Assembly (NCBI GenBank): GCA_973895155.1
Contig: OZ316897.1
Span: 8,455,832-8,519,831 of the forward strand
Reading direction: 5' to 3'
Source of the DNA: Marsupella aquatica
Taxonomy: Eukaryota; Plantae; Marchantiophyta
DNA: 64,000 nt
In this document: positions 13,420 to 40,942 of the stretch, in pieces
Position numbering within the stretch: the first letter of the stretch is position 1
Layout of the letters: each line of letters starts with the position of its first letter
Position numbers and translations under genes: made by a program
The notes under the pieces: generated by a model
What the model saw: only the letters and a program-made list of their open reading frames with translations
What the model was told of the DNA's origin: nothing
The model's database searches: none

Positions 13420-14413
13420 GTATTATCTGCCCGCTACGCATGATGCCCAAATGCCCCTTCTAGAAGGCCTACCTCTCCTGAAATACTGAGAGTTGTCCAC
13501 ACATTCTTTTCCTTGTTCCTTATGAGGGCATATGGACAATTTTTGAACCGATGATGTGCATGATTCAGAATTATGATAGGGCCCACTCCAGTCTAGAAGT
13601 TTCAATTTGTGATAACGGTCAATATTCCCATCACCGTGGTGAGGCCACAACCAAACCGGAGGGTCAATTGACCCTGAGGCAGATCCTCCCAATCTTGGCA
13701 AAATTCAGTCCACTAATGCACTTGTGGGTCAGTCCAACAACGATTTCCACGATGCCACCGCCAGCATCCAGTTTGATTGAACTTTGGCATACTTGACACC
13801 GTGGTCAGTGACAGCATGACTCAATTCGACCACCGTGAGCTGAAAACAATCAGAACTGTTCTGTGGCTTATTCCACATTTCATGCTCAGCTCCTTCTGGC
13901 AGGTGGAGAAATTCGTTGCTGACCCAGTATCTCGTGCGGCAAAAGCACTGTAATGTTGGCTGTTGACAATGTGTGGGTAACTTCCTCGATGTGAGTTCTC
14001 TCGACTGCTGGGTCTTGAGAGAATGCACATTGTGTCTTCCCCAGAGAAGATTACTAAGCTCGCCATAGAAGAACTTAAGTACTCATATTGAAGCACCTTG
14101 TGATCAATGCTCGAGCTTATGGGTCTGGGGAGAAAGCAACTTGTGCCCATACCCTAGAAAAGAATAATCTGCTGGCCACAGACTTGGAGGACCCAAAATT
14201 GAAGCCAAGAAGATAGGACGTCAAGTAACCAGAAGGGTGCTGCAAGAAGATGAAAACCATCCATAGAGGAGGTGCCTGTGTGTCCCCACCCCACTCTAGA
14301 AAGAAAAAACCTACTGGACACAGAATACCCAAATTGACACAAAGGATTGTGAGGTCAAATACCCGATAAGGGTGCTGCCATGAAAGGCTGGATTCAAACA
14401 ACCTTTCATTCAT
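13420..14413 (-). pseudogene. Degraded GT61-like glycosyltransferase paralog
   Basis: An ATG ORF with a hydrophobic N-terminal segment starts 41 bp after the GT61 stop. Joining across frameshifts gives 'ILSRPSSRE..IEEVTHTL', 'STCQKELSM' and 'SAHG../ELSHAV'. These parallel 'IINRLNSSREIRNADEVEAVL', 'SFCQQVSVM' and 'TPHGSHNVNFLF' in the intact neighbour. Many stops and frameshifts. Confidence 0.4.
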
Positions 14414-14454
14414 TCAATTCATTCGATGTGAATTTCACTCACTACACCATAAAC

Positions 14455-15795
14455 CTAACGATAAAGAGCTAATAAAAGCCTGAGCTGGTGAAGATCTACA
14501 TGGACGTTCTGGCCCTTGGCGTAATTCATGCACTGCCTGACCGAGAAGCAATTTTTCCACCCGAAGAGAAGAGAATATAGAGTCATCCTCAACGGCATCC
14601 CGCCATGCTCCTCTGTGGGCCAAGTCCCAAACAGCTCGTGGTAACCTAACCTTGCAGAGTGCACGTAGTTGCGAAACCAATCGAGGTAGTACAGTAAAGG
14701 AAAGGCCTCAAGCACAATAGCCCCCGGGCGAGCAAATAGGAAATTAACATTGTGAGATCCATGAGGAGTCACAAACATATCCGCCTCTGACATCACACTG
14801 ACCTGCTGGCAAAAGCTCCCCACCCCACTCGTCACCCTCCTAACAGGCACCCCCAGCTCCCTCTCCAGGACAGCCTCCACTTCATCAGCATTCCTAATCT
14901 CTCTGGATGAGTTCAGCCTATTGATAATCACCACATCCTTCACAGGCTTTCTCCTCTCCATCGGCTTGATCTCACAATGAGACAGCACCTTCTGTCTGAG
15001 CCAGTCATTCGATTCAGTGTTGGGTACATACCCTGCATTTGTCACACCAGAGAAGAGCACAGCATCTTCAAAGCAGATGGCCTTCTCCCCACGTTCTGGA
15101 ACAGGGGGGAATTTCACATGCAATTCATCTGCAAAAGCCTTCATCAGCCCGATGGACCACACAGATGTCACCTCTGGAACCGGATCTGTAAACCAGTATA
15201 ACGAGGAGCCATTCAATCCATAAAATCGAGACAGGAGGATTGCCGGGATCAGCTTCTCGGCCTCATGGTGTGGACTAGGCCCGACTTTGTGCCCATTGGG
15301 CATCATTTTCATGTCACCCACCATCTGGGTTCCGTGGATCCACACTGCTCCCACATTCTCCTCGTTCTTCATCTCGTGAGGACACACCCCTCTCTTGATG
15401 GCCACACTTCTTCGCCAGTACTGATCTTTGCCAGTAAATCTCAAGCTCGAAGGTAAGAATTGCCCTCCCCCGCTGCAAACCGTGACCATGTCATGGGAGA
15501 TGCAGAGGTCTCGCACTCTGGGGAAGCACCGGCCTCCGCAGTTGTTGGAGCAGACGACATCCTCTTGCAGAATATAGGGGTGGTCATCCAGAGATGTCAG
15601 CGTGTTGCTCGAGCAGGACGGTAGGGCGGTTGGGCTCCGGTAGCTGGGAGGGGGGACGGAGGCCATCCATTGGATAAGGATTAAGGAAATTAGGAAGGTG
15701 AAGAAGATTAAAAACCAGTTTCTACGGATGAAAAACCCTGTCACTCGCCGAACTCCTCCTCCTCCTCCTCCACGCCGCCTGATGTAGGTCATCAT
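14455..15795 (-). CDS. Glycosyltransferase family 61 (DUF563-type), type II membrane protein, 446 aa, intronless CDS
   Basis: Single 446-aa ORF with a basic N-tail and TM segment (WFLIFFTFLISLILIQW). GT61 hallmarks 'ICFEDAV', 'IINR..SSREIRNADEV', 'QQVSVMSEADMFVTPHGS..VNFLFARPGAIVLEAFP'. Confidence 0.88.
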   Translation of the reverse strand: MMTYIRRRGGGGGGVRRVTGFFIRRNWFLIFFTFLISLILIQWMASVPPPSYRSPTALPSCSSNTLTSLDDHPYILQEDVVCSNNCGGRCFPRVRDLCISHDMVTVCSGGGQFLPSSLRFTGKDQYWRRSVAIKRGVCPHEMKNEENVGAVWIHGTQMVGDMKMMPNGHKVGPSPHHEAEKLIPAILLSRFYGLNGSSLYWFTDPVPEVTSVWSIGLMKAFADELHVKFPPVPERGEKAICFEDAVLFSGVTNAGYVPNTESNDWLRQKVLSHCEIKPMERRKPVKDVVIINRLNSSREIRNADEVEAVLERELGVPVRRVTSGVGSFCQQVSVMSEADMFVTPHGSHNVNFLFARPGAIVLEAFPLLYYLDWFRNYVHSARLGYHELFGTWPTEEHGGMPLRMTLYSLLFGWKNCFSVRQCMNYAKGQNVHVDLHQLRLLLALYR

Positions 15796-16604
15796 CCTGT
15801 CTGCTATTCCCCTTATGATTGCCTCTTGGTACTTGAGGGAATTTGATACCCTTCGTTTTGCCTTCAGGTCTCTTCCGAGCTGTTTCAGTCTTCATCAATC
15901 ATTCATCTCCGACTCCAATCGAGCTCGTCCTTTCTGTGTCTCTTCAGCCAACCTCCTCGTACTCTTTTTTCGTTCATTCCTGTCCAATCCAGCTCCACCT
16001 CCTTCGCCTGCTCTTATTCAGCCAGAGACCTCTCTCCTAAACCGCTTCTCTTCAGTTTCCAACATCTGATAAAAGTTCCGACTCTTTAGCCTGCACCTCC
16101 GATTCAAGTGAGAGCACTACATTGCTTTGATCGACGATCTTCTGGACAAATTTCGTCCAAAAACTACAGTTGCGTTAACCTCCCTCGCTCATGAAGACGG
16201 TGAGTACAAATGGGTGTCTGGCCCTGCTGCACAAAACCTGATATCCAGTACAAGTCTTCTATGCAGAATTCTGGACACGCCCAGAATTACAAGCGTTCCT
16301 GAACGAATGACAATTCCTCCTTGTTGAGCCCTTATTAATTTGTCTGCTGGTTCTGGGAGTTCATGAACCTCTTTTCAACGCTTGTGTTTCAATTCAAGCT
16401 CGGATTCAGGGGATCTTCAAAAACCGCCACTCCTCTCTATTTCATGATCCTCTTACTCAATGTACTGCACATTCAATGGCTACTACCCGAATGCCAGTGC
16501 GTTGCACAGTTGTTGCGGACGTGTTGCGATAGAAATTGAGACTCCAGCCCTCATCATTTACATATAAGAATATAGAGGCAGCTCTGGATCATAGAAAAGC
16601 ATCC

Positions 16605-18268
16605 TTATGAATCTTGACCGGGTCCCTTCCGCTTCCCTCGAATTAGGCCTCGATCCTTCGGCAAAACAAACAGATCACCCAAAATCAAATGTTGCTTTTG
16701 AAATGTTTGTCAATCTCGCAGTATGATCCATATCAACTACGAACTATGGAAGAAGCCAACCTATGCAATCTACAAAGAAGGCACACGCCTCATCGCCAGG
16801 CACAAGAGAAGACATCTCAATCACTATGTCGCTGTCTGGTGCTTGTGATAATAGTGGCTACTTACGTAAGCAGACGCATGCACTCTGCACCTTGTCTCTA
16901 TGAGCAGCACACGAATGGAAGTAAGCTGAAACAGCATCTCACTTCTGCCAAGACAGCTAGGCCTGTGCAAACATCTATACATATCAAAGAACTCAGCGGG
17001 ATAAGACAATATACCTGAGGATCAGAAACAGGCTTCACTCTCTCGACATAACGATGCAAATCTTTCTCTCTTCTTAACATTTGCCTGGCCTGCACATCAT
17101 CGACAAATCGGTTCAGATTGAATTATCCATATCAAACAAAAAGGCAGCTGAGAACCAAATGCGAATTTCCTTGACGTCGGCTTGACCTTAACCCATAGCA
17201 CAACACTTTCCAGTGTTACCAGTTTCATCAATTATGTGAGTCTTCCGGTTAGCTTTTGGAGAGTTTGGAAGCAGATCCTATTCTTCTGTAGCAAGAGAAT
17301 TTCTTACGAGATCGATAGTAATCCACTTCATCTTTCTCAAACGCATCAGAAATATGCTGGTTACTACATAGTTCAGGTGAGGGAGTTTGAATCCTTGCGA
17401 GCCAGACTTCTTGGCTGACGAACTGGTCTACCTCGCAATCACAGGCTCAGGGTAACCTTTGCGCATTGTTAGTCTCGTGGCCCTCTTGGATCCCCTGGAC
17501 ATTGAATCCGTCACTTATTCCCTCCGCAGTCCATTGGACATCATCAGTCCTCCCCAGTCTACTGCACGTGATCTTGTTTGGACCCGTCTTGACAAATCAG
17601 TCCCATTTCACGGGCCATGAATCAAAGGAGCTGCTGGAGATACAAGGGTGGACCAGGGTTTAGGATTATGTCCCCTGTAGGCTCCCATAGGCCCCGCTAG
17701 ACATTAACTTCATTTGTTCAGTCTGGCTCAGTATACTGAACGATATTTTTCTCTTTTTGATATGTCATCCGTGTCCCCATTGTGCCTTCCGCGAATTAAA
17801 GAAGCTGCTAGAGACAGCAGATCGCGTTATGCACCTGCTGGAGACAGGATGCTGGAGCAGGGTTTCGATTTATGACCCGGTCGTGGACCCTGCTGATCAT
17901 TTTGAAGTTCAAAGGTCCCAATTCAAACCTTTCATTGTACATAAGGACCAGCAACAACAAGAATTCTCTCCTCGAGTCCAAAGAACAAGAGGAGTCCATG
18001 GACAGGAGATGCGCAAGCAACCAAGCAACCAGAACAGGCACGGTGAGTGGCCAGATACCAGCAGAAAACAAAGGAGCTAGGGTGACCACGAGGGCAGAGC
18101 TCACTATACCTCCTCCTCTCGCATCGCTTCGCGCTCGGGTTTGATCCACAGGTAGTACGCAGCCGTGCCCGCCACAATCCACGAAGCTATGTTCTGCCGC
18201 CCCCTCACTCCGCCCAGCGCGTTCCCGATGAACGAAGTGATGTTACCGAGCACCGTGTCCCGGGCCAT
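16605..18268 (-). CDS. Small conserved plant single-pass membrane protein of unknown function, 94 aa, 3 exons
   Basis: Exons 18268-18110, 17089-17015 and 16655-16605, all phase 0 and GT-AG. Product: MARDTVLGNITSFIGNALGGVRGRQNIASWIVAGTAAYYLWIKPEREAMREEE/ARQMLRREKDLHRYVERVKPVSDPQ/DRGLIRGKRKGPGQDS*. Resembles a small angiosperm family ('SFIGN.MGGLRG..N.ASW.VAG..AY.LW.KP...RY.E.RKP..DPQ'), recognised from memory. Confidence 0.85.
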
Positions 18269-25950: not shown

Positions 25951-26871
25951 CTGTTTTGTGCTAGAGTTCAAAAGTGGTTTTAGTCATGGGACCCAAAAAA
26001 ATTCATTTTCGTGTGGGGGGAAACGGTAGTAACACGAATTAAGGTGAAAATGGTAGATGCGGTCCTACCATGAGAAAGGCCCCACACCAAGGCTTTAATA
26101 ATAATACAATCATGTGGCAGCCACACGACCGTCTATCTCTTCGTTCGAGCCATCTTGGGCACGAGCACACCATCATACCAGCTCGGCTTTTCTACCACAA
26201 ATTTAATCCTGCCTCCAATCCAGCGATCATTGAGCTCGATTCCACATTGCCCACAACGTAACTCTGCCTTTGCTCGCTCCAGAGCTCAGCTCAGCCCATC
26301 CCAGCATTGCCCAAGAAGCTCCTGTCTCCTGTCCAACAGTGGCCACAAATCCTCCACTGCGTGGGTTCATTCCAGAGCTCAGCTCAAGTACAAAGCCTAC
26401 ATTGCTCGAATTGCTTTTGTCCACCATTGCCCACAAAAGAGAAGCTCCAGAATTCCGCCCATCTTGTAGTGAGGAGACTTATTAAGCAGTGTCCTCATCA
26501 CTCTGGGCGGTATCTCTATTTCCATTAATTTCCTGCCACTCTGGTGGTCTTGGGGGTCTCTCTGCTACCATCAATTTCTGCCAATTTGTTGAACAATTGA
26601 CTGCTGTGGTGTCTCTTGCGGAATTCAGTGAAGAGTCTCTGGGAATGGAGCTGAAAGCCAGTCTTTGATTGTGATTACTGCACAGAATTAGGTAGGGAGC
26701 AAAATTTTGCCGGTATACGCCTCTCTGCCTTCACCATTAATTGAGTCGAAATTGCTCCATTGGTTTATCATCAGCTGCTGTCTCGTCGAAATTTTCTCCA
26801 TACACTCAGCCAGGAAGAAGCGATAATCGAATTTGGGCTGGCCAAATCGCGGAGAAGGGAAGAAGGAGCAA

Positions 26872-29626
26872 ATGGCCTGTAGCTTTCCTGCAATCGTCCA
26901 TCATCCAGCATCAGCGGTGGTCTCCTTGGGATCGCCAACACGTCTGAGGGGCTTGGAAGGCCGGACAAGAGGAGGAGGAGGAGGAGGAGGAGGTGCGGTG
27001 TGGAGGGGAAGGGAATTAGGGAGACAATTTAGACCTCTGGTGGCTGCATTGAATACAGAAACTGCAAGTTCTTCTACTTCGTCTTCGGAGCCAGCAGAGC
27101 AGCAAGGGCCTCCTATCATCGAGATTCAATTTCTCTCTGTAAGAGACCTACTGCACTCTTGGGGATATCTGAGCACGAATCATATGACAGTCCTGTCGTC
27201 AGTCACGTTTGGCCCCTTTGTACTCAATTTCTAGATCTGCTCTTTGGATTCATAATGCTCATAGGTTGATCATTGTGACGGGACATTTAGTTTATTTTGT
27301 GCTCTCTTCCAAAGTCCAAACCCTGATTAGGTGACTGGACTTGAAAATTAATTTCAATGCAATTGCATTAGTCTGTTACACAGTTCCTTGTGAGTTATGA
27401 TAGGCAGTAATTTTTCCATCTTGTCAATATGATTATGGAAGTGGTAATTACGGTTGGTGTCTTTTGAAGTTTCTGTAATTGTTTCAAGTTCGGATTTCTT
27501 ACCTGCATGTACTCTTTGTTCTTTGTGCGTTGTTGTTCCAACGGACTGTCAATCTGGCAGCCAGAGTCAGTCTCTGATTCTCAAACGTTTTCGGCTGTAA
27601 GCGGAGAGAAGAACTTGAGGAAGTTTATGCTCGAGAACAAATTGGAGCTCTATGCACTTTATGTACGTACAAGATTCTTTTGACAAGCGTATTTCTCTTG
27701 TGTGACCTAAGGTTTCATTATGCCCCTGTTTGTATCAGAGGACTAACATCATATCTGTCTTCTATATGTGTGCACGCTTGGTCACTGATCTGGAACTTGC
27801 AACCGACACTTTCCTCCCGAAATAGGCTTATTTTACCTCTGCTTTAGAGTGGCCTTTCAAGCCAAAGTTTGGTACCGATGCTCTCAGTAATTATCTAGCA
27901 CTACAAAGTTGCCATAGTGAAACGGGCTGAAGGTGCTTGATCTGTAGTGACTGAACATTCATGGTCGTAAATAAATGTCACTAATGTCAAGATAGATCTT
28001 TAATAAGGACAGGCGCCTTGGCAAGTGCGTGATTGTCATCCGTTCATGTGCTTTGCAGAAAGAGATCATCGTACGAGCTAAACAAGCCACTTAAGTGCCT
28101 CTTTAAATATTGTCTCCAGCCAGAGGATGTTAGGAAAAGGCTTTCCCTTAGTTGTTTCTAAAGTTGCATAGTCTGTAAGATATTGGGACTCTTGGCCTGT
28201 TTTACAATCTGTATCAATTGAGCACGCAGACTGTCGATCAATCGCAAACCGTCTATGGGTTTTGGCAGGGAAAAGTGATGAACTGTGGAGGTGGAGGCAG
28301 CTGCGGCACATGTATGGTAGAGGTTTGTAACTGATCGCCATTCTCGTCGTTTAATCTCAATCTCAATCTCAGCACAGGTATAGGATAATCACCGTCTTGA
28401 AGTTCTTTTTCTACTAGATCTCGAGCACGTTTTGGATGATAAACTGTAGAAAGTGGGCACGGTCTGTATGGTATCAATTGGATGTCAATACATTTTGGAC
28501 AAACTGTTTTTCGTTCAATTTCCAGGATCATGTATTGATTTTGTTATGTAAGAGGAGGAACGTTGGGAATGTCCGGTCATTAATTTGTGTTTTTCTTAAT
28601 TGCTTTCTTACAGTCGTCGGATTTTTGAATGGATACGATGTCCGTGTGTAATCTATATTTCCAGTCACAAGAAAAGCTGATTGTGGGTACTTGAAAGTGA
28701 GCAGATACTTGAAGGCCAGGAGCTTCTGAGTGAGAGAACGGATGCAGAGTACAAATACTTGAATAAGGTATTCCCTTCTTCATCATATAGCTACTTGGAA
28801 TATTATGAGATCTGTAGGCTTTCGCTAGTGTGTCTCAGGAGGTGGTGAGGACAGAAGTTCAGAATGATGTGCATGTGCCTGCGTGTGAAACAGGTTAGGA
28901 CAGGACCTCAGAAATGCAATGTCATTGATCAGTTTTGCAAGCTGGTAGGAAAGCTGCTGCTCATGAATTTCCTACCTCTGTTTGAGTCTCACCTATTGTA
29001 GTGTCTGACACGATCAACATTGGATCTGAAACTTCGAAAGTTTCCTGAATTATTGACTCATAATTGCAGTGCATTCACACTACATATACCTAGGAAGGCT
29101 ACCTTTCTGATTTTTCTCTTTCTGACTCCGTGGTCAAAATCTCAGTGATTGCCACCTACGGTTTGAGAAACTGGGAGCAACCCTTAACCGGTTGGATTGA
29201 ACTATAGGAAACTTGAGAGTAGGAGCTTTCACAGATACTGATCTGTGCTTACGTGTGGAAAATTCCTGCATTTTTGCAGAAACCTGAGAGTTGGCGTTTG
29301 GCATGCCAGACCATTGTTGGGGACAAATCTGACAACGGAAAGGTGTGTACCTTTCCCGCATACTATTGCTAACTTCTCTCTAGTTACTATATTATGTGTC
29401 CTTCTGTCCTGTTATCATCATTTCGTCAAGGACATGATTCGTTTGTATAAAACAAAGGCCATGACGTTGATAGAAGGCCTACTTGCCCAATTGTCTCTGA
29501 CTTGATTCCAATCCAAGAGGTTTAAATCTATCCTTGTAATTCACGTAGCGATGCCGACTGATTTTTCCTCGTTGTAACCTCGTTGTACAGGTAGTGGTAC
29601 AACGGCTGCCACAAAAGAAGAAGTAG
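26872..29626 (+). CDS. Plastid-targeted 2Fe-2S ferredoxin-like protein (At4g32590/PnsB3-related family), 194 aa
   Basis: Exons 26872-27138, 27561-27662, 28269-28322, 28705-28767, 29280-29342, 29591-29626, all phase 0 GT-AG. Cys motif 'MNCGGGGSCGTCMVE' plus 'WRLACQT'. Transit-peptide-like N-terminus. Confidence 0.92.
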
Positions 29627-32600
29627 AACACCTCATGCGCCGCTGCATTAAGATCTGATTTATAACTCATTTAGGCATCCATGAACCTTGCTATACTTCA
29701 GTGGAGGTAATGCACATATGAATAAACGGAAGTCTGATTCAACAGTTTTGTTCCCCGGTTTCAGCGGTTGCTATGATTATGGTTTGATTTCGAGATGAAG
29801 TTTTGGACTTGAGATCCCGTGACAAGAGGTGCAAGACTTCTCAAGAATATTTGCACTGCTTGTTCTATCATTTTTGTCGTTGGCAGTACCTCTTGATAAA
29901 CGCTGGTCACATCCCTGGCGTAATGGGACTGGCAGTCAGGATTAATGGACAAGAATAGTATCCCGAAAGTCCAGTACGATATTTTGATTACCTTGCATTC
30001 CTACGGTCTCAATGTTTTGCCCTGATCCTTACTGTAGGGAGTTGATATGTTCCCATTTCTTAAGCACTGCTTCGGAAAAAAGATATTCGTTCCGCTATTA
30101 TTCCGCTAGGGAGTCTGAGAGCACCTCCGGAAGCCAAACCACGAAGTACATTCCCTTGTTGCTCAAGACATTTTGCTGTGAAGGTATCGGTATGACGGAT
30201 AGGTTTCTGTGAAGATGAGCGACATTGGTTGGGTACTCCAATTCGACACTGCTAAATGTCGAGAAGTTCAGCCTCTGGGAATTAACAATTGTAGAGGAAG
30301 AAGAAATTGACAAATTAGTGTGGGTGAACTCATCGATAAGACAGCGGGGAACATTGACAAAATATGTCCATTTGCATGTAGTTTTATGGCTTGAAGACAT
30401 TTTACCACGATTGCAATAGGAGTATACTCTTCTCATGTTAGGCGATCCTCTTCATGGGGACTGTAGTATCTTCGTCTATGCGGCTAAGGTGTTCTATTCG
30501 GACAGGACCGTGAATGAGTCTCTCCGTGAACAATTTGTCTTTCGTTCATAACAAAGGCATCAGAGTAAACCGAGCTGAGACTTTCCGCTGCAGGTTTACG
30601 GAGTGAACAGAAAGTCATGCTATGAGAGGTCCCCAAATAAGACGTTTTCCATATGAGTTTTCAATGGAAATCACCCACAAATTAAGCTTCCTAGGAGTGG
30701 CCTTCCCAATTGTGTAGAGATTTCAAAGGACTATGTAGCTGCACGCGCGGAGTTCATTCCAATTCGCTGACTTCGGCCGATGAGAACGCAAATCCTTCCC
30801 TCAAGCATGCCAATATTCCCCTGAGAATTTATTCCCAGACTTACACAGAGGTTCAACCATCTTCCTAACTGCAAATTTTACTCAGAATGATTTCGATAAT
30901 ATTGGGCACTGGGTAGCACGGTATCTCGAAAAAGAGAGAAGGATCGTTTGTCATCGCCATAATCAGATCACCTCTTAGAGTATAAACTTCTGGAGTGACA
31001 AAACTATAGGTAGATATATGTGCATAAGCACCTCGCGGTTTGGCTGCTGGAAATGTCTTCTCAAGCCCCCAAGACCGGAGTAGAGATCTAGGTCTAGCAA
31101 TGGTTGGAGACACGGTGTCCATGATGGGTGATGAAGGTGTAGTGGGGAGTGAATAAAACATTGGTCAGCGCCTCAGGTGGAGTTGAAACAAATAAATTCC
31201 GGACCTTCCGAATCCCTTGCAGCCACTCAATCACAAGGGAACAGAGGCATTATGTTGGCCGTTAAACAAACTAGGTGTATACGATTGTTCCCCATTCTTT
31301 GGGTCGTGAATTTCGCAGGTTTAAGCGAATTTTCAATTCCTGGGTTGTCAATGTTTGAAATGGAGCGTCAACTTGTCAAGTCTTGGAGTCTGAATTTCTC
31401 AGGTAGGGTACGAATTCATAAATTCTTGGGGTACGTGTGAATCAAATCAAATGATCCATAAAAGACATCTCATGTCCCATAGTCTGAACGTGCATTGAAT
31501 CTGCCATGGATGTATCTGCTTTGCGATAAACTTAGTCAGGCAAATCGGTTTTTGACACACGGGGGTTTCGTGTTCTGTACTACTGTAGCAGTTCGTGGCC
31601 TCTGTCATTTGACGAAACAATGCTCTGTGGCAGCTCTCATCTTGTCCTTACGGTCTATGGTACGTTCCCACAATTTTTTCTTGATTGTTTACTGTACATT
31701 TTGTCGGCCCTGTTTCAGAAAATTGGTTCCTTCTCCTGCAATTTCCAAGTGAAATTGTTATCGTTAGAAAACGAAGCTATTACCTGGTCACGTTGGCATC
31801 ACATCAGGAGTTCCGTCTACTCACTAACATCTGCCAACCTGATTTGTTCTATTTATGGGTTGTCCTCTTGTTATTCACTTCAGAAGTTACTTTTGTGGCC
31901 ACAAGTTCGGACTACGAAACCGACCATCCTACTCTTACGTGATGACAACGTACATCTGCCTTTGCTGGGCACCTATCTTCAAGATTTTTACATATCACTT
32001 GCTCCGTACTGGCCAAGGCGGACCCAGTGGATGCCAAATTATGTACAGGATTCCTCTTCCGATTGTGTTGGTTTGCTTCGCATGTCGTTTTTATGTCGTC
32101 AATTCGCCCTAGTAAGTTAACCCTGCAATTTGTGTTCAGATGCGGCCTCTAAACGCCAAAATTGTGTTTGTCTGAAGTCTATGGGATGTACTTAGTTTGT
32201 GGTCGTGACTTTCAGCTAAGGGAATGTTAGGGACTTCGGGGCATGAGCTTCCTCTGAATGACGGTGATCAGGATTACTGTACTTCATGGTGTGTTGCTTG
32301 ACTGGCACGGGTCTGATGATCAAAATTGAGCTTTCATCAACGGTAAGACTCCTGTGTAGTAAATCTCTAGCCAGGGTTGCGGGAAAATGCAACGAAGAAT
32401 CAAGTGCAGCACTTTTATCTCGCAAGTGCTCTGAAATTAGACTAAAGAGTTAGATTCGTGCATGTAGAAGATTGTGACTCTCCTCTGTTATTTTGGTATG
32501 GAAGCAGGGACGAAGGTGTGCTGTTCGATGGACACTTGCTGAATTCGAGAAACCTCTCTCATTCTGGGTTGTTGAATCCTTGCTTGGAAGGAACGAGCGC

Positions 32601-32744
32601 TAGAGCAGTTTATGAGGAGGTACCTTGTTCATGAGCATCATTCTGCGTGACTGACTGTCAAGTAGCACTTGAAAATTAAACCCATGCCAAATCTGCAGTG
32701 GTCAGAATTGGATAGATAGACGAAGAGGTTGAAAACAAGCCAAG

Positions 32745-33356
32745 ATGTCTGAAAAAGACCAATCTTCCTCAGCGTCAAATGTTTCTTCAATTTTCACACT
32801 CAGAGCGCCAGCAACAGCAGCAGTGGGTACCGCTACCTCCTCTAGCACCACCTTCAAGCCCCCTCCCCTTCCATGGCTTATGGGGACCTGGCATGTCACA
32901 CACTCCACGCTCCCAATGTGGAAGAAATCCCGGAACGTGGCCATAACCTACAAGACACTCGGCTCGGACTCCGATCAGCGTCTAGACGATTCAGTCACAT
33001 ACCAAGGGCTCTCCTCGAACAAGATCAACACCATCACGGGGATTGACACACCGGCCGGGCCGGGGGCATGGAATTGGCGTGGGAGAGGCTGGCTGATGAT
33101 TGCTAGCTCGCACTGGGAGATTTTGGGATACGGTGGTGGGGAAGGGGAGGAGTTGGGTAATGGGAACGGGGAACAATGGGTGGTGACATACTTCGCAAAG
33201 ACGCTCTTTACTCCGTCTGGGATTGATATTTACAGTCGGAGGAAGGAGGGGTTGAACCAGGAGACTGTGGAGGCGATCAAGCAGGCTCTCGGGAGGGTGG
33301 ATTCGGAGGTGGTGAGAAGCTTGGTGAGGGAGATATTTGAGGTGAAGAGTGATTGA
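32745..33356 (+). CDS. Intronless lipocalin/calycin-like protein resembling filamentous-fungal hypothetical proteins, 203 aa
   Basis: Intact ATG ORF with a lipocalin-type GxW motif (WLMGTWHVTHSTLPMW). Further blocks 'RNV.ITY', 'LDD.V.YQ', 'GIDTP', 'WNWRGRGWLMIASSHWEILGYG', 'WVVTYFAKTLFTPSGIDIYSR'. A branch-point-like CTGAC and CTGCAG acceptor lie just upstream (32651-32698). Confidence 0.8.
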   Translation: MSEKDQSSSASNVSSIFTLRAPATAAVGTATSSSTTFKPPPLPWLMGTWHVTHSTLPMWKKSRNVAITYKTLGSDSDQRLDDSVTYQGLSSNKINTITGIDTPAGPGAWNWRGRGWLMIASSHWEILGYGGGEGEELGNGNGEQWVVTYFAKTLFTPSGIDIYSRRKEGLNQETVEAIKQALGRVDSEVVRSLVREIFEVKSD

Positions 33357-34979
33357 TTGATGCACTCCTGACGAAAGAGATTAGGATGGGATTTGTAGGT
33401 CCTTTCAGCCTCCTTGGGTCCTCTGTTTTTGAATCAGTTCGAGACTTTTATCATGCCTCCTTGTAATTCTTTCATTGACTAGAAAAGTAAAGAGTTATTG
33501 GTTGTGGCAATTGTCTACTAGAAGTTGGTGGGGGGGATGTTTGCGCTGACGATTGATTGGCAGGAATGCGCCTTATCAGCTCTAAGATAGTTCAGGATTC
33601 AATTTGTAGGAGACGCCCGCGTTTTGGGACTATTTCGAAACTTCTTTCACGTCTGGTTGTAAATTTTTTGATAAATTTTCAACCCTTCAATGTATATTTG
33701 GAATTTCCCAGTTTGTAGCAGTCTCTACTTAAGATTGGTAGGGAGATGATTGCTGCCAAGAATGATGACAGCAATCCACATTGAAAGACTACAGGATTAG
33801 ACTTTGCACGGATTTTGTCTCGTAGATCCCGCCGTTGGACCATTGTGAGACTTCTTCAGGTATCCCGATGTAGGAAGATTCTTCGGAAGGTTTTCCTTCC
33901 TTGTAACAGAGAAAATCCAAAAGTGTTAATTTGCAGGAATTTTACAAAGCAGATTCCTCAATCCTTAGTATTCTGGAGACATTTCACTCTAACAGCCCTG
34001 CCGCTGTGTCCTTTCGTTCCCCACCCTTCATTATAACTCAGGGCTATTACATTCAGTTTGATTCGATTCAGCTGGATGCAACTTACCTCCTTCCAGTTCA
34101 ACGCTATATAATACTTTGATTCTAGGAGTAAGATGTCAATCTCACCAATGCTCTGACTCTTGTTCTAATTCCTACGGTTTCCAAATTCGATCGATTGAAC
34201 TGTTGGAATTCTGGAAGAGGCGGGCTTAGAAATCCTAGTTTTAACGAGAGACAGGGATGTTTCATGGCAAGAGGTGTTCAGTGTGGTTAAGACGTCGAAC
34301 CAAAACTTTTACACCTGAAACAAGGAAACTGAAAGGGCTTGGCTTCCTTGATTTGTTATAAGGTGGTAAGATATTGACGACCCAAGGGTGTACAGTAGGT
34401 ACTCTATCACTATAAGCAGCACGGCAATATCCCGAACATAAACAATCATTTCTTCAACTTACCTCGCTTTTCGACATCACGTGTGACGTTTCCTGATTTG
34501 TTTCTGAGACAAAAAAACGTACACAGCTTATGACAATACCCAAGAGAATCTAAAGTTGTATGTATTGATTGGAGCCTCGTGGCCAATTTGCACGCACGAC
34601 AAAATTTCCATATTGGTACAATTTTGGCACAGGCTGGCAGCACTGGGAAGCCCAATAAAACTACCGACGTGAAGGCCAAAGTTGCACTGAATTGCTATCC
34701 TAGGACAGCTAACATTGATTATGACAGAGGGCAAAGTATGTACAACCGAAAGGAATGCTGGATGTCTTTAGTCCTAAACATGTGCCTCAGCTAATAAGAA
34801 TCCAAGCTGACCCTGCAGAGGACTTAACTCACGAACTTGGGTTAGAAAAAAGGCCGTGGAACCTTTCCTGTACACTTCCCTAGATGGAGAATTTGGCCCC
34901 ACCGAGGAGCGACAACTTTTCAAAATTTTACGAGTATGAATTCAAAAAAGAATTGAGGAATCCAATCTACTCGAATCTA

Positions 34980-37900
34980 CTACTCTATGGGCACCGACCA
35001 GTCACTATTGATATGACCATACTGAATGTCCAGGATTGCTCGAGTAAGTCTCCCACTAAGACTGAAAGGTTCATCTGCCTTGGGTTCTTCTAGTGCCATG
35101 CCAGCCGGCTTCTCTGTCCAGTGCGAGGCCGCTCTTGTATCGAAGGGTATGCGGATTTCCCTGTTGTCCTCCTCCATCAATAGCCCGACTATGGGTTGAA
35201 TAATGACCGCTGTCCCCGTCCCAAACACCTCCACAATGTTTCCTTTCTTATCTGCCTCATCAACCTTACCAAAGAAGAAGCAAGTCAGCCGGTCCCTTCA
35301 ATGGCAAATTTGACAGCCTCAAGCAGAAAGCTCAGACTCAGAATTGACAATCACGGTGGCTCCCAACTCTGCTTTGTGTACAATGTGCCATTTCGATAAC
35401 AATTTCTCGCATGCTAATGTACTACAGGTCATTCTTGATGCCAGTGGAGACCAATAGTGTTTAGAGAAAAGTTATAAGTTCATACCTCGTCCCAGGACAA
35501 CCGCCTCTCCGAGACCTGGATTCCCCCAAACGAGCGAGTGAGGGCAAGCACAGAGTCTCTGGTGACTCCAGGAAGAATGACGCCGTCAAGATGGGGAGTG
35601 ACAAGCTCAAGCTGGCCATCATTCTTCCTCAGCAGAAAGAAGACATTCATGGCTCCAGATTCCCCAACTGCTCCTCCTTCACGCCCATCATCCAGCACAA
35701 AAAGGACCTGTTGGCAGCCTAGCTCTAGAGCCCTCGTCTGGGGAACAATTGTGGGAGCATAGTTGCCTCCCACTTTTGCATCCCCTATACCACCAGGAAA
35801 TGCCCTGACGTGCTTCTTCTCAACGAGGAGCCTAATGGACCTCAGCCCATCTGGAAAATAGGGCCCCACTGGAGAGAGTACACAGAAGATGGCGGCCGAG
35901 CTCGATGGGCCCATTCCCAAGTGAGGGTGTGTGGAAATCATGGTGGGCCTTATGTACAAAGAGAATCCCTCCACATCTGGAATCCAGTCTCGCTCCACTC
36001 GCAGAAGAGCCTTGATGCAATCTAGTAAAGCTTCCTGATTGCACAGAAGTCCACAATTACAACTGATCAGAGGTTGAACGGTTGCGGAACTGTCAAATGC
36101 ACAACTTCTGTCAGCACTTTGCAATCCATGAGAGCTTCTTCAATAATGAAGAATCTGCCCATCATCGTCATGCTCGAGATCTGTGCTTCAGAACTCTAAC
36201 ATATAGATGATAAGCTTGCATTATGTACACTATAGCAATGGTGAAATAGGTCTATAGATTTTGCTACAATGAAATTGCTTGAAGCCTACTAAATACCTAT
36301 AGGCTTCAAACAATTTGATGGGTAATATTGTAGGCTCCAAGTGCGACAACTTTACCCATCAAATATTCTAAAGTCCACAATATTAATTATTTGATATTGT
36401 ACCTTTATATTTGATATTTGATATTGGCAAGCTGCATATGTGACACTAATTAGGCATATTGTTGTATACTTTTTATATAGTCAACATACAATTCTTCAAC
36501 CACGTTTTACAGACCCTTACAGAAATACAAACCCTTGACCATATGTAAAGTATCCAACAATGTACCTAATTAGTGTCATGCATGGCCTCTATGGTCTACA
36601 ATGAAGACTCCAGACCATGACTTGGGGGACCTAAGTGAAGTTGGGGGTTGAATGTCCTCACCTCTATTTACATTCCAAAAAAGGTCACTCAGGCTAGTAG
36701 TTCATGAATTATGGTCAACCCATCTCGACTGTCTCCAAGGTGTAGGAAGAAGAGAGACATCATTCTATCACCTTCACATTTGATTAAATTCTATAAATGA
36801 GAGCCCATTTTCCAACTTTCCCACTTCACCCATCTCGACTATCTCCAAGGTGTAGGAAGAAGAGAGACATCATTCTATTACCTTCACATTTGATTAAATT
36901 CTATAAATGAGAGCCCATTTTCCAACTTTCCCCACTTCACTGTGTGTTAAATCGAAGTGAAGTTAATGCGTTTTGTACTACAGAACATAAACCAATACAC
37001 TATATCATGATCTACAAACCAAGTGATTTGAACCACAAGTGTCTTGGTTTATGTTCTGGTTGTAAGGCTGACTGACATAGATTTTAAAGCATGGTCCTAG
37101 CTCCACCTCTTCATCCCACCAGAATCTTCTCAAATTGTTGGAGTGCATAGTGCTCAAACCGATCCACTTCCCTTTTGCTGCTCCAATTGAACGAGAAGTC
37201 GAAAGGGAGAAGGTGGAAATGCGGGTCCATCGAATAATGGAGCTCCAACCTTCGCCACCCAAGGTCATGGGACACTATGCTAGGGGCACTCTACAGTCCT
37301 GGAAAGATTATGTGGCAAGGATGGAGGTGGTAAAGTGGTGCTGTGGTGCTGTGGAGCAGAACTGCTCTACAGTGATGCAGCTACCGATGAGCTCATCTGC
37401 CGCCTCCGGCAGCAAGTGCAAACAACAAAAGTGGCCTAGAGTGCAAATTGCAGCACCGTAGCTGGAAGAGAAGTGGGGATTGGTGAAAGTAAGAAACTCC
37501 AGTATTCTCGTTTGTCTCTGGTGTTACGAGTTGCAGCCTGCTCCAGAGGGACTTTTGTAAAGGAGCAAACTAAAGTGGCAATTTTCTCGTTGCAGGGGAG
37601 AGGAAGAAAAAGAAAGGCGGCCGCTTTCTCTCTGCAGACCCGCTTTCTCTCTGCAGACCCGCTTTCTCTCTGCGTACTGCAGATCACATGTCAGCCACAT
37701 GGCCAGCCCCATTTCAGAGAACTGAGTTCAGCAATGCAGGAAGAGTGTTTACCCACTTTCTGATGGCATACTGGCAAGCGATTAATGAACTCGGTTGACA
37801 GGTGGGGGGGCTTCGAATGAAATGGAGTCAGCTTGTAGTTTTTCTGGAGTCTGCAGATCTTCACGACCGGTGCTAAGATATCGTGCCAACTGGGGAGCAA

Positions 37901-39708
37901 GGTAGGTACTGTAGCACCCAGCCTTGGGATTTTCATGCGCAGTGACTTTAGCAGGGTTGACAGTTCCAGATTCTTGTCCCCACAGCAGAAAAGAGAGGTC
38001 GCTCAACCATTTACACCCTCCCTCTATTCTCGAGGACAACTTTGAACCTTTGAAATCTAGGCTAACTATATCCCACACTGTTCTGATTTCTGAAATCACA
38101 TGCTGAGCAGGTGCTCTTACGCAAACTCTGGAAGTCTTTACAGTGAGATTGAGAAAAAATCGGCAACAGTGACATTGACAGGGAAGGGTTTTTCCCAATC
38201 ATGTTGGAGACATGGCATGGTGGGCCAAACCTTATCAAATGCAGGTAGTCCGAGCCTTGCCGCAGAACGTGCAAACCGATTCATGTTCATCTCTGGCCTG
38301 AAAAGCCGAATTCTCCCATCCCTGGCCTTGAATGCTTTCATGCCCTCGAAGCACTCCATTGCATAGTGTAGCACCTGCCAAAACACACCACAGGGAAGCT
38401 TAAATGAGAAACATAGTCCATGTTTGTTGGACCGCTTCCACCCACCCCACCAGGAGGAGAACGTACTTAATGGTAACTGTACAGTGCAAGCCATGCAAAT
38501 CTGCGAGAATTCAGCAGTTATAAGCTTTTGTTGGAGCACCTGAGCACAAGGATGAATGGGTATAGGTCCCAGCCGATCAATGGATGGGGCCCCCCAGCCA
38601 AACCCCGACTTCCAAGTTATAAATAGCATGTGATCTGTGTACTCAGCCCCAAACTTGAGCGTTATCGCATCCAACCTCGGTTTTACCTGCATTTCAAGGG
38701 TTCGCAACACTGAGCTTCTCCGCTGACGTGAATTGCTTCATGAAAATCTCTATCAAGTTAAAAACCGACTCTCCAAATAGAAGATTACAACTCAGCGGAG
38801 GTGGACGAAAATCGATTTGCTTTGAGAGATCGGACCTAAGATGTGAAAGAGATCCACCCAATATCACTGTGAAACGAATCATGATGCAAACTTCCAGACA
38901 GTGGTGTTTTAAGAATTTGAAGTCTAATTTAAACTTTATTATAAGCCAATGTAAATCATATGTAACCTCGTGTTAAAATATGTGGAAATTGTATAAACTT
39001 ATGTGGTTCCATGTAAATCAGATACAAACCATGTCATAGGATGCAATATATGTAAATTACATGTAAAATTACGTTTCCCAGTATACAAGTCCTCAATTTC
39101 TGTGAAGTCCAAAACTCTGCGGCCGATTCAATTTGCGGATTTGAGAGAAAGATTTATGTCCTGTGATGCTTTGGTTACAGATTTGAGAACAAGTAGATGG
39201 AAATTGCAACCGCGAAAAACGTCGAATTTCGTTGGAGCTTAGAAAGCTTATCGAAAACAGTTACTCTAGGAGGCAAATAGGACATCCTCCCAAACCCATC
39301 ATCACGATTTGATCCCCGAGAAATTCTACAGATAGGAAATGCGGTCCTGAAAGACCGAAAGTCAATGACAGGGAGCAAATTAATCACCTTCAAATGCTGC
39401 GCTACACTCATCACAAGATCTTCAGGAACAATGTCAGAGGGGAGCTGGACAGGCGCTAGTAGAGGCTCAGCTAGGCCCTGCTGCACTGCGCCAAAGCTTC
39501 TCAATCCTCTGCTGCTCGTTGAGTACTCCCTCCAGCCGCTGGTCGTCGTCCGATCAGGAACACCATTGCCGTTGGTGACCCAATCTGGTTCATTGGCCAA
39601 ATGGCAAAAGTCCGACGATGAAGCGTGGATTGCATTCAAAATGACAGAGGGCTTGTTGGTCTGGCCCCATAGCTGCCTCAAAATTTTGTGTACAGGGTAC
39701 CTGAGCAT
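34980..39708 (-). CDS. BCAT: Branched-chain amino acid aminotransferase (PLP class IV), probably organelle-targeted, ~481 aa, 5 exons
   Basis: Exons 39708-39388, 38686-38540, 38374-38231, 36034-35486, 35264-34980, all phase 0 GT-AG. Motifs 'FGAEYTDHM', '[14 protein letters not shown]', 'LYIRP', catalytic '[10 protein letters not shown]', 'ESGAMNVF', 'ILPGVTRDS', 'EVFGTGTA'. The start ATG is inferred; the frame stays open to an ATG at 39888. Confidence 0.9.
36718..36939. repeat. 110-bp tandem duplication inside BCAT intron 3
   Basis: Two near-identical units starting 'acccatctcgact.tctccaaggtgtagg'. Confidence 0.9.
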
Positions 39709-39894
39709 GATCTTCCTGCAGATTCCACCGACAGACATCTGTGGTAAGTATAGAAAGGATCTCAAGCAAGAATATGAATTCAATGCTTCACAGGAATACA
39801 TGCTGCCCTTGACCGTCACGCTGCCAAGGATGACATCTGCAGAGTGATCGAGGGATTCCAAGATGAGCCGCCCAATTCTAGGAAGCATTGAACA

Positions 39895-40094
39895 GTTTCT
39901 TGACGTAGGAAAGTCCCGAGTCTACTAACTACATCACCAATAAATTACTTTTCTGGGTTCACTGAATTGATTTTCCTCTACGTAAGGCTACTAAGTTTCT
40001 TGACGTAGGAAAGTCTCGAGTTTACTAACTACATCACCAATAAATTACTTTTCTGGGTTCACTGAATTGATTTTCCTCTACGTAAGGCTACTAA
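39895..40094. repeat. 100-bp tandem duplication upstream of the BCAT CDS
   Basis: Two units 'gtttcttgacgtaggaaagtc...cgtaaggctactaa' with 2 mismatches. Confidence 0.9.
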
Positions 40095-40942
40095 CAGACT
40101 ATTGGTCTCAGGCTTTTCGACTATCAACAGCTTTAGAAAGCATATTCTGGAATTGCCGTACAGAACGGAAAGGCTAGAATTCAATCAGCATCATAACAAG
40201 ACTTCAACAGGCTGGGATAAGCGGTTGAAAAAACCCGCAATGATATTGAATTCCGGCACCCCTTGATTAGTATCTGGGTTAGAATTGAAATCCTACTCTA
40301 ACAAACCTTGTCTCATTAGAATATTTAGACTCTATAATCTATCCTAGCAATGTAATCACAAGTCAGTAAGGGTCCGCCAGAACTAACAATTTTGCTCAAG
40401 TATGGAATGACGCTTAGCAAAACCTGATTCGTATAACAGAGGCAACAACTTTCCAGTGGATTCTCTTTGAGTCATCCTGATCGACAGGAAGCGAGCAAGT
40501 GATGACCTCCACTAGCGCCTGAAAGACATTCGCATGAGCTGGAATCCATCACTCAATGAAAGAGTTTAGGGTCTACGTCAACTAAATTTAGAGCCACCAG
40601 TGAAGCCCATGAAGAAGTCATGACCCGTGTTCAAACAACCCAAGTACTTTTGCTCACAAGGAAACTCCGTGGCAACCGTATAGGCAGGATAATCATTCGT
40701 GCTCGTCCCAGTCATGATGGCCTGACCGATTTCAGGAAAATGATAATTTGATGAATGTTCACTAGAACCGCGTCATAAATCTATAACTGAAAAGTGAACT
40801 TCTGGACATGTGCACTGCCATTGGGCCCCCGAGGAGGAGTCAACCGCTCTGTGCTTGAATTCTAGCGACGTATAAAGGCTTCGGAAGAAGGATACATTTA
40901 AACTGGCGATGACAAAAGCTGCGGGTGAAATCGGGAATCTCT

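What the first reader, a model, noticed from the sequence alone, without database searches (positions are those of the whole stretch)
32745..33356. Candidate fungus-to-plant horizontal gene transfer: intact lipocalin-like gene
Seen: an intronless, intact 203-aa ORF between two spliced plant-style genes (ferredoxin-like and BCAT), with a splice acceptor 47 nt before its ATG. The coding strand is C-rich in the 5' half and strongly G-rich in the 3' half, unlike its neighbours. Knowledge: the blocks GTWHVTHSTLPMW, WRGRGWL.IASSHWEILG and TYFAKTLFTP.GIDIYSR are ones I associate with uncharacterised filamentous-fungal calycin-fold proteins, not with plant TIL/CHL lipocalins. Inference: an acquired gene that gained a host 5'-UTR intron and may bind small hydrophobic ligands.
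Basis: partly seen in the sequence, partly recalled or inferred. Interest (0 to 1): 0.85.

Follow-up and report, generated by a model that had tools for sequence, protein, structure and literature searches.

The report
Fungal lipocalin gene in liverwort chromosome
A leafy-liverwort chromosome carries an intact, selectively maintained gene for a small barrel-shaped ligand-binding protein whose other known relatives here are all fungal, so it is a real, old fungus-to-plant gene transfer, one more example of a known phenomenon.

Summary
The 203-aa ORF at 32745-33356 (+) is intact and lies between a Fer2-type ferredoxin gene (+) and a BCAT gene (-). The same gene order occurs in Calypogeia fissa, and the DNA is colinear over about 13 kb. 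Contamination and chimeric assembly are excluded. One read-derived contig spans ORF and flanks, runs from a second study cover the ORF at flank depth, and C. fissa has four intact copies on Mb-scale contigs.

Apart from three liverworts, every named homologue is fungal. A careful tree groups the liverwort clade with Leotiomycete-type sequences (98/93). AU tests cannot show that it nests inside that group, and distant paralogues cannot root the tree. Polarity therefore rests on distribution, branch lengths and the fungal species tree.

dN/dS among liverworts is 0.16-0.21. dS equals that of the neighbouring BCAT, so there was one transfer before these species split.

The AlphaFold model (pLDDT 88.6) is a lipocalin barrel closest to Blc, ApoD and Arabidopsis TIL (Z 16-17), though no Pfam model matches.

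Expression and the proposed 5'-UTR intron could not be tested. The ligand and the function are unknown.

The scan earlier reported a fungal SelO transfer elsewhere in this genome; it did not report this gene.

The parts
32745..33356 (+). Single-exon CDS (203 aa plus stop) of the fungal-type lipocalin-like protein
   Evidence: ORF intact. 92% identical to a Logan liverwort contig, 79% to C. fissa, 54-72% to fungal proteins. Lipocalin fold. dN/dS 0.16-0.21.
32428..32636 (+). Conserved non-coding block 110-320 nt upstream of the ATG; probably promoter or 5'-UTR
   Evidence: 78% identical to C. fissa contig 12. Aligned in all five liverwort copies. No Rfam family.
32696..32698 (+).
   Evidence: Present in the sequence. 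The CTGCAGTGG motif is kept in 2 of the 3 C. fissa copies aligned, and the AG is also kept in L002. The candidate GT donor is AT in C. fissa. No RNA data.
33357..33768 (+). Conserved 3' flank; probably 3'-UTR
   Evidence: The blastn blocks 32734-33768 against C. fissa L001 and L008 run about 410 nt past the stop. L002 aligns unbroken as far as 34131.
27281..29663 (+). Upstream host gene: spliced Fer2-type (2Fe-2S) ferredoxin-like gene. Exons mapped at about 27555-27680, 28206-28325, 29274-29354 and 29584-29650.
   Evidence: tblastx and blastn against the annotated Fer2 gene of C. fissa contig 12. Pfam Fer2 E 0.0095 on exon 28206-28325.
34699..39074 (-). Downstream host gene: spliced branched-chain aminotransferase (Aminotran_4). 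It converges on the ORF; its stop codon is near 34983.
   Evidence: Pfam Aminotran_4 at 5.5e-17. Exon-by-exon colinearity with the annotated C. fissa BCAT genes. dS 0.45 against C. fissa.

Best explanation
The ORF is a bona fide nuclear gene of a leafy liverwort related to Calypogeia. It was acquired once, by horizontal transfer of a single intronless gene from a filamentous ascomycete. The donor was most likely a Leotiomycete-type lineage that is so far known mainly from metagenomes. The transfer happened before the window's species, a second species (Logan contig L002) and C. fissa diverged. The gene landed between a Fer2 ferredoxin gene and a BCAT gene and has been kept under purifying selection since.

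The product is a soluble protein of about 23 kDa. It has a disordered, Ser/Thr-rich N-terminal stretch of about 45 residues, followed by an eight-stranded lipocalin barrel and a C-terminal helix.

Shown here: integration, synteny, age relative to the host locus, selective constraint, fold, and fungal affinity.

Inferred: the protein works as other Blc/ApoD/TIL-type lipocalins do. That is, it holds a small hydrophobic molecule (fatty acid, sterol, tetrapyrrole or terpenoid) in the barrel cavity, probably in the cytosol, since no signal peptide or added transit peptide is visible. The ligand and the benefit to the plant are unknown.
For: Integration and contiguity:
- blastn gives 18 colinear blocks against C. 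fissa contig 2 and 22 against contig 12, on both sides of the ORF.
- One contig of run X1 spans 29600-35400 without a difference.
- Runs X2 and X4, from another study, cover the ORF at the same depth as the flanks.
- C. fissa has four intact 205-aa copies on contigs of 3 to 47 Mb. Contig 12 has the order Fer2, gene, BCAT.

Fungal origin:
- The search found 848 homologues, and all named ones among the best 120 are fungi except C. fissa.
- The distant members that carry a name are also fungi.
- The nearest unnamed relatives lie in a conserved compact fungal locus: SPB4 helicase, the gene, SEC18, RasGEF. The SEC18 at that locus is 82-85% identical to Leotiomycete proteins.
- The split of 17 Leotiomycete-type plus 3 liverwort sequences against 32 other fungi has 98/93 support.
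- Liverwort node-to-tip length is 0.35-0.38, against 0.32-0.69 for the fungi of the same clade.
- Only the CDS matches fungal DNA.

Age and selection:
- dS between the window and C. fissa is 0.507 for this gene and 0.447 for the neighbouring BCAT exons.
- dN/dS is 0.16-0.21, with Fisher p from 4e-9 to 2e-15.

Fold:
- AlphaFold2 model with pLDDT 88.6 and pTM 0.85, eight strands plus a C-terminal helix.
- The Foldseek hits listed (ranks 1-50) are all lipocalins, natural or engineered.
- VIA-align: Blc Z 16.8, ApoD Z 16.5, Arabidopsis TIL Z 16.4.
- The G-T-W motif has a nearly invariant Trp49.
Against: - AU tests do not reject the liverworts being sister to the Leotiomycete-type group rather than nested in it (p 0.21).
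- With long-branched paralogues as outgroup, a root on the liverwort stem is not rejected either. Topology alone therefore does not fix the direction or the donor.
- Hyaloscypha, the genus known to live in Calypogeia rhizoids, is absent from the best 120 hits. The two Helotiales members I looked up (Hymenoscyphus, Halenospora) are distant, at 35-37% identity.
- No RNA evidence of expression was obtainable.
- No Pfam lipocalin model matches the protein, and no ligand is known for any family member.
- Among the recent C. fissa duplicates, dN/dS is 0.6-0.7. This rests on only 13 to 25 differences and is not significant.
Confidence: 0.85

Rival explanations
1. Real transfer, but the donor was not a Leotiomycete. 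It could have been another Pezizomycotina lineage (for example a lichen-forming or other bryophilous ascomycete) or the stem of the Leotiomycete-type group.
For: AU p 0.21 for the 17 Leotiomycete-type sequences forming a clade without the liverworts. The closest relatives (P0003-P0006, P0008) are unnamed. Their SEC18 is only 82-85% identical to named Leotiomycetes and 80-81% to some lichen fungi. Best identity to any fungal protein is 72%.
Against: Support of 98/93 for grouping with Claussenomyces, Pseudogymnoascus and their unnamed kin. Identity is higher to this group (median 60, max 69%) than to other classes (median 54%).
Confidence: 0.12
2. Ancient vertical inheritance: the gene was present in the common ancestor of plants and fungi and lost from every plant lineage except a few leafy liverworts.
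For: A root on the liverwort stem is not rejected when distant paralogues are used as outgroup. The structurally nearest solved proteins include plant TIL.
Against: Only three closely related liverworts hold it, among 848 hits and 580 clusters. The liverwort proteins are as close to Leotiomycete-type proteins (patristic median 0.76) as those are to each other (0.82), and closer than fungal classes are to one another (about 1.1-1.45). That root would make Leotiomycetes paraphyletic to all other sampled fungi. The gene has no introns, as in fungi, while both host neighbours are spliced.
Confidence: 0.02
3. Fungal contamination or a chimeric assembly.
For: Leafy liverworts harbour ascomycetes in their rhizoids (paper 10.1101/2025.04.01.646537), so fungal DNA in field samples is plausible.
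Against: Same position in two independently assembled genomes, with colinear non-coding flanks. Four C. fissa copies on Mb-scale contigs. One contig spans the junctions, and depth equals the flanks in another study's runs. dS equals that of the host neighbour. No fungal flanking gene is present.
Confidence: 0.01
4. Real transfer, but the gene is now a silent or decaying relic without function.
For: No expression data. dN/dS is 0.6-0.7 among the recent C. fissa duplicates. All four C. fissa cluster members come from the genome annotation, none from transcript assemblies.
Against: All six liverwort copies known here are intact: five read as DNA and a fourth C. fissa protein of full length. Between-species dN/dS is 0.16-0.21, with p below 1e-8. 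The upstream and downstream non-coding blocks are conserved.
Confidence: 0.04

Closest known systems
Uncharacterised lipocalin-like ('Calycin' or 'Lipocalin-like domain-containing') proteins of Pezizomycotina, e.g. Claussenomyces M1818_000722, Pseudogymnoascus verrucosus VE01_07371, Aureobasidium AUEXF2481DRAFT_1640
   Same: Full-length homology at 52-65% identity, and up to 72% to unnamed metagenome members. Same conserved blocks (GTWHVTHSTLPMW, WRG.GWL.IASSHWE, TYFAKTLFTP.GIDIYSR). Same N-terminal low-complexity stretch, same intronless CDS, same C-rich then G-rich strand skew.
   Different: It sits in a plant chromosome between Fer2 and BCAT, not in the fungal SPB4-SEC18 neighbourhood. Its divergence follows the liverwort host locus.
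Blc / ApoD / plant TIL branch of the lipocalins (PDB 1qwd, 2hzr, 8wb2)
   Same: Eight-stranded barrel with a C-terminal helix and an N-terminal G-x-W motif. Z 16.4-16.8, rmsd 2.3-2.6 over 142-154 residues.
   Different: Only 12-18% identity. No Pfam Lipocalin or Lipocalin_2 hit for this protein; 1 of 95 family members hits Lipocalin_2 at 1.7e-5. It has an extra disordered N-terminal stretch of about 45 residues. No ligand is known. It does not descend from the plant TIL/CHL genes.
Published fungus-to-bryophyte transfers, e.g. microbial-type terpene synthases (MTPSL) and other genes discussed for Marchantia (PMC12890914, which cites Ma et al. 2022)
   Same: A fungal gene fixed in a bryophyte nuclear genome and retained under selection.
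   Different: Those events are placed at the origin of bryophytes or of land plants. This one is seen only in relatives of Calypogeia. It involves a family I did not find mentioned in that literature.
Fungal SelO/Fmp40 gene reported by this scan elsewhere in the same genome (note s1-769209)
   Same: Same genome, same proposed donor class (Leotiomycetes), also shared in synteny with C. fissa according to that note.
   Different: A different gene on another piece of DNA. I did not re-test that claim.

Membership tests
Lipocalins (calycin superfamily) | Eight-stranded antiparallel beta-barrel followed by a C-terminal alpha-helix | tested here: met
   AF2 model with pLDDT 88.6: strands 47-54, 62-71, 80-88, 94-105, 108-113, 121-130, 145-150, 159-164, and helix 172-183. 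The Foldseek hits listed are all lipocalins at probability 1.00. VIA Z up to 16.8.
Lipocalins (calycin superfamily) | SCR1: a G-x-W motif at the start of strand A, preceded by a short helix | tested here: met
   G47-T48-W49 follows helix 42-45. W49 is kept in at least 90% of 95 family members.
Lipocalins (calycin superfamily) | SCR2 (T-D-Y-type motif in the F-G region) and SCR3 (Arg or Lys on the last strand packing on the SCR1 Trp) | tested here: inconclusive
   The last strand (159-164) and what follows carry the conserved G159, D161, Y163 and R165. I could not read the model's coordinates to check the packing.
Lipocalins (calycin superfamily) | Match to a curated sequence model (Pfam Lipocalin PF00061 or Lipocalin_2 PF08212) | tested here: not met
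   No Pfam family at E up to 1. Of 95 family members, one hits Lipocalin_2 (1.7e-5) and one hits VDE (0.037). A profile search against PDB sequences found nothing.
Lipocalins (calycin superfamily) | Binds a small hydrophobic ligand in the barrel | not testable with these tools
   Needs recombinant protein and binding assays.
Plant TIL/CHL lipocalins | Descent from the plant lipocalin genes: nearest homologues are plant proteins, and there is a Lipocalin_2 match | tested here: not met
   The nearest homologues are fungal, and there is no Lipocalin_2 hit. Only the fold resembles TIL.
Fungus-to-plant horizontal gene transfer | Physically integrated in the host chromosome, not a contaminant | tested here: met
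   A spanning contig, and equal depth in runs of two studies. Spliced host genes on both sides.
Fungus-to-plant horizontal gene transfer | Same insertion at the orthologous locus in related host species | tested here: met
   Colinear with C. fissa contigs 2 and 12. L002, from a third species, aligns unbroken over 1.6 kb.
Fungus-to-plant horizontal gene transfer | Phylogeny places the host gene with, or within, the donor group | tested here: inconclusive
   Grouping with Leotiomycete-type fungi has 98/93 support. Nesting inside that group is not significant (AU p 0.21). Rooting by paralogues is uninformative. Branch lengths favour a fungal origin.
Fungus-to-plant horizontal gene transfer | Absent from other plant lineages | tested here: met
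   Among the best 120 of 848 hits, the only plant is C. fissa. Six distant family members that carry a name are all fungi. Limit: unannotated plant assemblies are not in the protein collection.
Fungus-to-plant horizontal gene transfer | Maintained by selection in the host | tested here: met
   dN/dS 0.16-0.21 between liverwort species, Fisher p below 1e-8.
Fungus-to-plant horizontal gene transfer | Expressed in the host | not tested
   No run holding the stretch is on record as RNA. The laid contigs show no joints.

The most novel reading that the evidence does not exclude
The gene may be one of a batch of genes that passed from ascomycetes living inside leafy-liverwort rhizoids into the ancestor of Calypogeia and its relatives. 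This scan flags a SelO gene and about twenty further fungal-looking genes in the same genome. On this reading an intracellular plant-fungus symbiosis acted as a repeated route of gene flow into the host, and the lipocalin was kept because it handles a lipid, sterol or tetrapyrrole exchanged or sensed at that interface.
Probability: 0.2. Interest if true: 0.75.

Novelty: new member of a known kind. Interest (0 to 1): 0.5.

Why it matters
Transfers of fungal genes into bryophytes are documented, but mostly as ancient events at the base of land plants or of bryophytes.

This one is younger and restricted to one lineage. Both junctions are preserved in two genomes, a host neighbour gives a matched molecular clock, and there is clear purifying selection. 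That makes it a clean case for studying how a foreign gene is domesticated.

It also gives a first handle on a widespread, strongly conserved fungal lipocalin-like family (580 clusters at 50% identity) that has no Pfam model. I found no study of its function.

The apparent donor class includes the fungi that colonise Calypogeia rhizoids. C. fissa now has a genome, axenic culture and a reconstituted symbiosis. A link between symbiosis and gene acquisition could therefore be tested directly.

Tried and rejected
1. My first look for the 'ferredoxin-like' neighbour found nothing. The regex scan began at 28500 and the Pfam segments at 29000, both past the cluster-binding exon. The C. fissa copy I compared (contig 2) has no annotated Fer2 gene. 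The contig 12 copy corrected this.
2. Rooting the tree with distant paralogues (Hymenoscyphus, Halenospora, Xylariaceae, Phakopsora) failed. Their branches are 1 to 4.5 substitutions per site, they moved about, and a constrained tree even beat the quick free search. I dropped them.
3. AU tests A, B, B2 and C did not reject any alternative placement. I report this as a limit, not as support.
4. Sequence searches against PDB with the single protein and with the family profile found nothing. Pfam found nothing for the protein.
5. Rfam found nothing in 27000-35000.
6. No run holding the stretch is on record as RNA, and the laid contigs show no splice joints. Expression, transcript ends, read-through from Fer2 and the 5'-UTR intron all stay open.
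7. The two Logan sample accessions are not mentioned in the paper library. The species behind L002 and L006 are therefore unnamed.
8. I did not name the window's own species. It is identified only as a relative of C. fissa.
9. The third protein search, the complex prediction and the second structure job were not used, because no open question would have been settled by them.
10. Fer2 and BCAT were searched exon by exon, by reference. I built no joined spliced model.

Full report
**Observation.** The window holds an uninterrupted ORF at 32745..33356 on the + strand, with an ATG start and 203 codons. G+C rises from about 0.43 in the flanks to 0.56-0.59 inside it. GC skew runs from -0.18 in the first part to +0.53 in the last. 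A CAG ends 47 nt before the ATG.

**Host context.** Downstream on the minus strand lies a spliced branched-chain aminotransferase gene. The stop-to-stop segment 35483-36139 hits Pfam Aminotran_4 at 5.5e-17.
- I first failed to find the upstream 'ferredoxin-like' gene. My regex scan started at 28500 and the Pfam segments at 29000, both past the cluster-binding exon.
- One of the C. fissa copies (contig 12, locus L008) has an annotated Fer2 gene upstream and Aminotran_4 downstream.
- L008 is colinear with the window from 26853 to 40242 in 22 blastn blocks. tblastx maps the Fer2 exons to about 27555-27680, 28206-28325 (which carries the C-x5-C-x2-C cluster motif), 29274-29354 and 29584-29650 on the + strand.
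- The cluster-binding exon alone hits Pfam Fer2 at E 0.0095.
- The order Fer2(+), ORF(+), BCAT(-) is therefore real and conserved.
- Both neighbours were searched exon by exon, by reference.

**Not an artefact.**
- A contig of run X1 covers 29600-35400 without a single difference. It may be the source of the assembly.
- Run X3, from the same organism, has loose ends at GATC sites, as a Hi-C library would.
- Runs X2 and X4 come from a different study and carry about 1% of differences. They cover the ORF at the same depth as its flanks.
- C. fissa contig 2 (46.8 Mb) has the gene at the same place, with 18 colinear blocks of 67-93% identity on both sides.
- C. fissa has four intact 205-aa copies on four contigs of 3 to 47 Mb. 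This fits the whole-genome duplication reported for that species (10.1101/2025.04.01.646537).
- A 1675-bp Logan contig from a third species (L002) encodes a 92% identical protein. It aligns unbroken to 32493-34131 at 82%.
- Only the CDS matches fungal DNA. A gene that flanks the fungal orthologues has no counterpart in the window or in C. fissa.

**Who else has it.** The protein search gave 848 homologues. Among the best 120, every named protein except C. fissa is fungal: Leotiomycetes (Claussenomyces 65%, Pseudogymnoascus 55-59%), many Lecanoromycetes, Dothideomycetes, Penicillium, one Lipomyces and one Auricularia.
- An exhaustive search of 1.84 billion cluster representatives found 580 clusters.
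- Of ten distant members I looked up, five clusters carry names, and all are fungal: Hymenoscyphus, Halenospora, Xylariaceae and Phakopsora.
- The closest non-plant relatives (P0003, P0004, P0018; 57-72% identical) are unnamed. They lie on metagenome contigs with a shared compact neighbourhood: SPB4 helicase, the gene, SEC18, RasGEF.
- P0008, the sister of the liverwort clade, has a downstream gene homologous to one on those same contigs.
- The SEC18 next to P0003 is 82-85% identical to Leotiomycete proteins (Scytalidium sp. 3C, Pseudogymnoascus, Chlorociboria, Mollisia, Phialocephala) and 80-81% identical to some lichen fungi.

**Phylogeny, with its limits.**
- A 110-row quick tree recovers the fungal classes. 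It puts the three liverwort sequences (99% support) among Leotiomycete-type sequences.
- A careful IQ-TREE analysis gives 98/94 for that group with outgroups and 98/93 without them. The split is 17 Leotiomycete-type plus 3 liverwort sequences against 32 other fungi.
- The AU test does not reject a tree in which the 17 fungal sequences form a clade without the liverworts (lnL 13.8 lower, p 0.21).
- With long-branched paralogues as outgroup, the root can be put on the liverwort stem at no cost. The quick-tree tests were also unreliable, since a constrained tree beat the free one.
- Topology alone therefore shows affinity to the Leotiomycete-type group. It shows neither nesting nor direction.

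**Direction.** Three other observations give the direction of transfer:
- The gene is known from three closely related liverworts and from hundreds of fungal clusters.
- From the node of the joint clade, the liverwort tips are 0.35-0.38 away, against 0.32-0.69 for the fungi. Liverwort to Leotiomycete-type distances (median 0.76) equal those within the fungal group (0.82) and are below the distances between classes (1.1-1.45).
- A root on the liverwort branch would make Leotiomycetes paraphyletic to all other sampled fungi.

**Age and selection.** Between the window and C. fissa, dS is 0.507 for this gene. For the exons of the neighbouring BCAT it is 0.447 (0.49, 0.51 and 0.26 for the three exons). 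The gene has thus diverged together with its host locus, which means one acquisition before these species split.
- dN/dS is 0.156 to 0.205 between liverwort species, with Fisher p from 4e-9 to 2e-15.
- Against the fungal orthologues, dS is saturated at 1.25 to over 4.
- The recent C. fissa duplicates differ at only 13 to 25 sites, with dN/dS 0.6-0.7, which is not significant.

**Protein.**
- AlphaFold2 with a 95-sequence alignment gives pLDDT 88.6 and pTM 0.85. The model has a low-confidence N-terminal stretch of about 40 residues, a short helix at 42-45, eight strands and a helix at 172-183.
- The Foldseek hits listed (ranks 1-50) are all lipocalins, natural or engineered: ApoD, cockroach milk protein, C8 gamma, sandercyanin and the VDE lipocalin domain.
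- An independent all-against-all structural search puts E. coli Blc (Z 16.8, rmsd 2.6, 154 residues), human ApoD (16.5) and heme-bound Arabidopsis TIL (16.4) on top.
- G47-T48-W49 is the lipocalin G-x-W motif, and W49 is nearly invariant in the family.
- By sequence the family is outside the curated models. There is no Pfam hit for this protein, and 1 of 95 members reaches Lipocalin_2. PDB sequence searches are empty.
- Language-model features also point to lipocalin-like clusters of Ascomycota and Basidiomycota.
- The N-terminal stretch is homologous to that of the fungal proteins, so no plant targeting peptide was added.

**Composition.** The C-rich first half and G-rich second half are not a mark of foreignness against the host. 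The fungal orthologues show the same pattern (-0.38/+0.58, -0.43/+0.68, -0.11/+0.50, -0.13/+0.29). It follows from a Ser/Thr/Ala/Pro-rich first half and a Gly/Glu/Val/Arg-rich second half. GC3 is 0.64, against 0.52-0.55 in the BCAT exons and 0.56-0.72 in the fungal genes.

**The 5' region.** A block at 32428-32636 is conserved in all five liverwort copies that I aligned.
It is altered in the third copy. L002 keeps a pyrimidine tract and the AG.
- The only plausible donor (GAGGAG|GTAC, near 32620) reads AT in all three C. fissa copies.
- C. fissa has expanded a roughly 40-bp unit between the motif and the ATG.
- No run holding the stretch is on record as RNA, and the laid contigs show no joints. 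The intron, the transcript ends and expression itself remain untested.

**Mechanism.**
- Shown: a single fungal CDS was fixed between two host genes and has been kept by selection. It encodes a Blc/ApoD/TIL-like barrel.
- Inferred: it acts as a soluble binder or carrier of a small hydrophobic molecule. The very high conservation of polar residues around the barrel across fungal classes leaves an enzymatic role open.
- Speculative: a link with the ascomycete rhizoid symbiosis of Calypogeia. The evidence is mixed. The apparent donor class fits, but Hyaloscypha is absent from the best 120 hits, and the two Helotiales members I looked up are distant.

**Novelty.** I found no paper describing this transfer or this fungal family. 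The C. fissa genome preprint does not mention horizontal transfer. Fungus-to-bryophyte transfer as such is well known (PMC12890914). This scan has already reported a fungal SelO gene, also shared with C. fissa, elsewhere in this genome, and it lists 23 findings under 'fungal horizontal transfer', this gene's own presumably among them. This is therefore a new member of a known kind.

Noticed in passing
L001:9640-9990, L007:7560-7990, L008:7560-7990 (C. fissa); window 32700-32744 has one copy: A unit of about 40 bp (GAATTGGATAGATA...GGTTCC...) is tandemly expanded just upstream of the ATG in all three C. fissa copies read. The window and L002 have a single unit.
   Followed up: partly
L001, L007 versus L008 (C. 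fissa): The copies on contigs 2 and 6 have UDP-glycosyltransferase genes upstream and only a relic-like match to one Fer2 exon. The copy on contig 12 keeps the order Fer2, gene, BCAT, as in the window. The locus was therefore rearranged after duplication.
   Followed up: partly
L003:7473-13225, L004, L005, L006: The closest fungal orthologues sit in a conserved compact neighbourhood: SPB4 helicase, the lipocalin-like gene, a minus-strand gene of about 280 aa, SEC18, RasGEF. The contigs come from unnamed Leotiomycete-like fungi known only from metagenomes.
   Followed up: partly
proteins P0072 and P0027: The Auricularia (Basidiomycota) protein pairs with Neofusicoccum (Dothideomycetes) at 100/97 support, inside the ascomycete part of the tree. 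This could be a fungus-to-fungus transfer or a mislabelled sequence.
   Followed up: no
window 39178-39921 (-): A stop-free segment of 248 aa with no Pfam match. It lies in DNA that is 77% identical to C. fissa, at or beyond the 5' end of BCAT. It may be UTR or promoter conservation, or an unannotated exon.
   Followed up: no
window 52130-53090 and 13420-18268: Other first-stage notes on this window (a Crinkler-like nuclease relic; a GT61 gene group) appeared in the look-up. I did not examine them.
   Followed up: no
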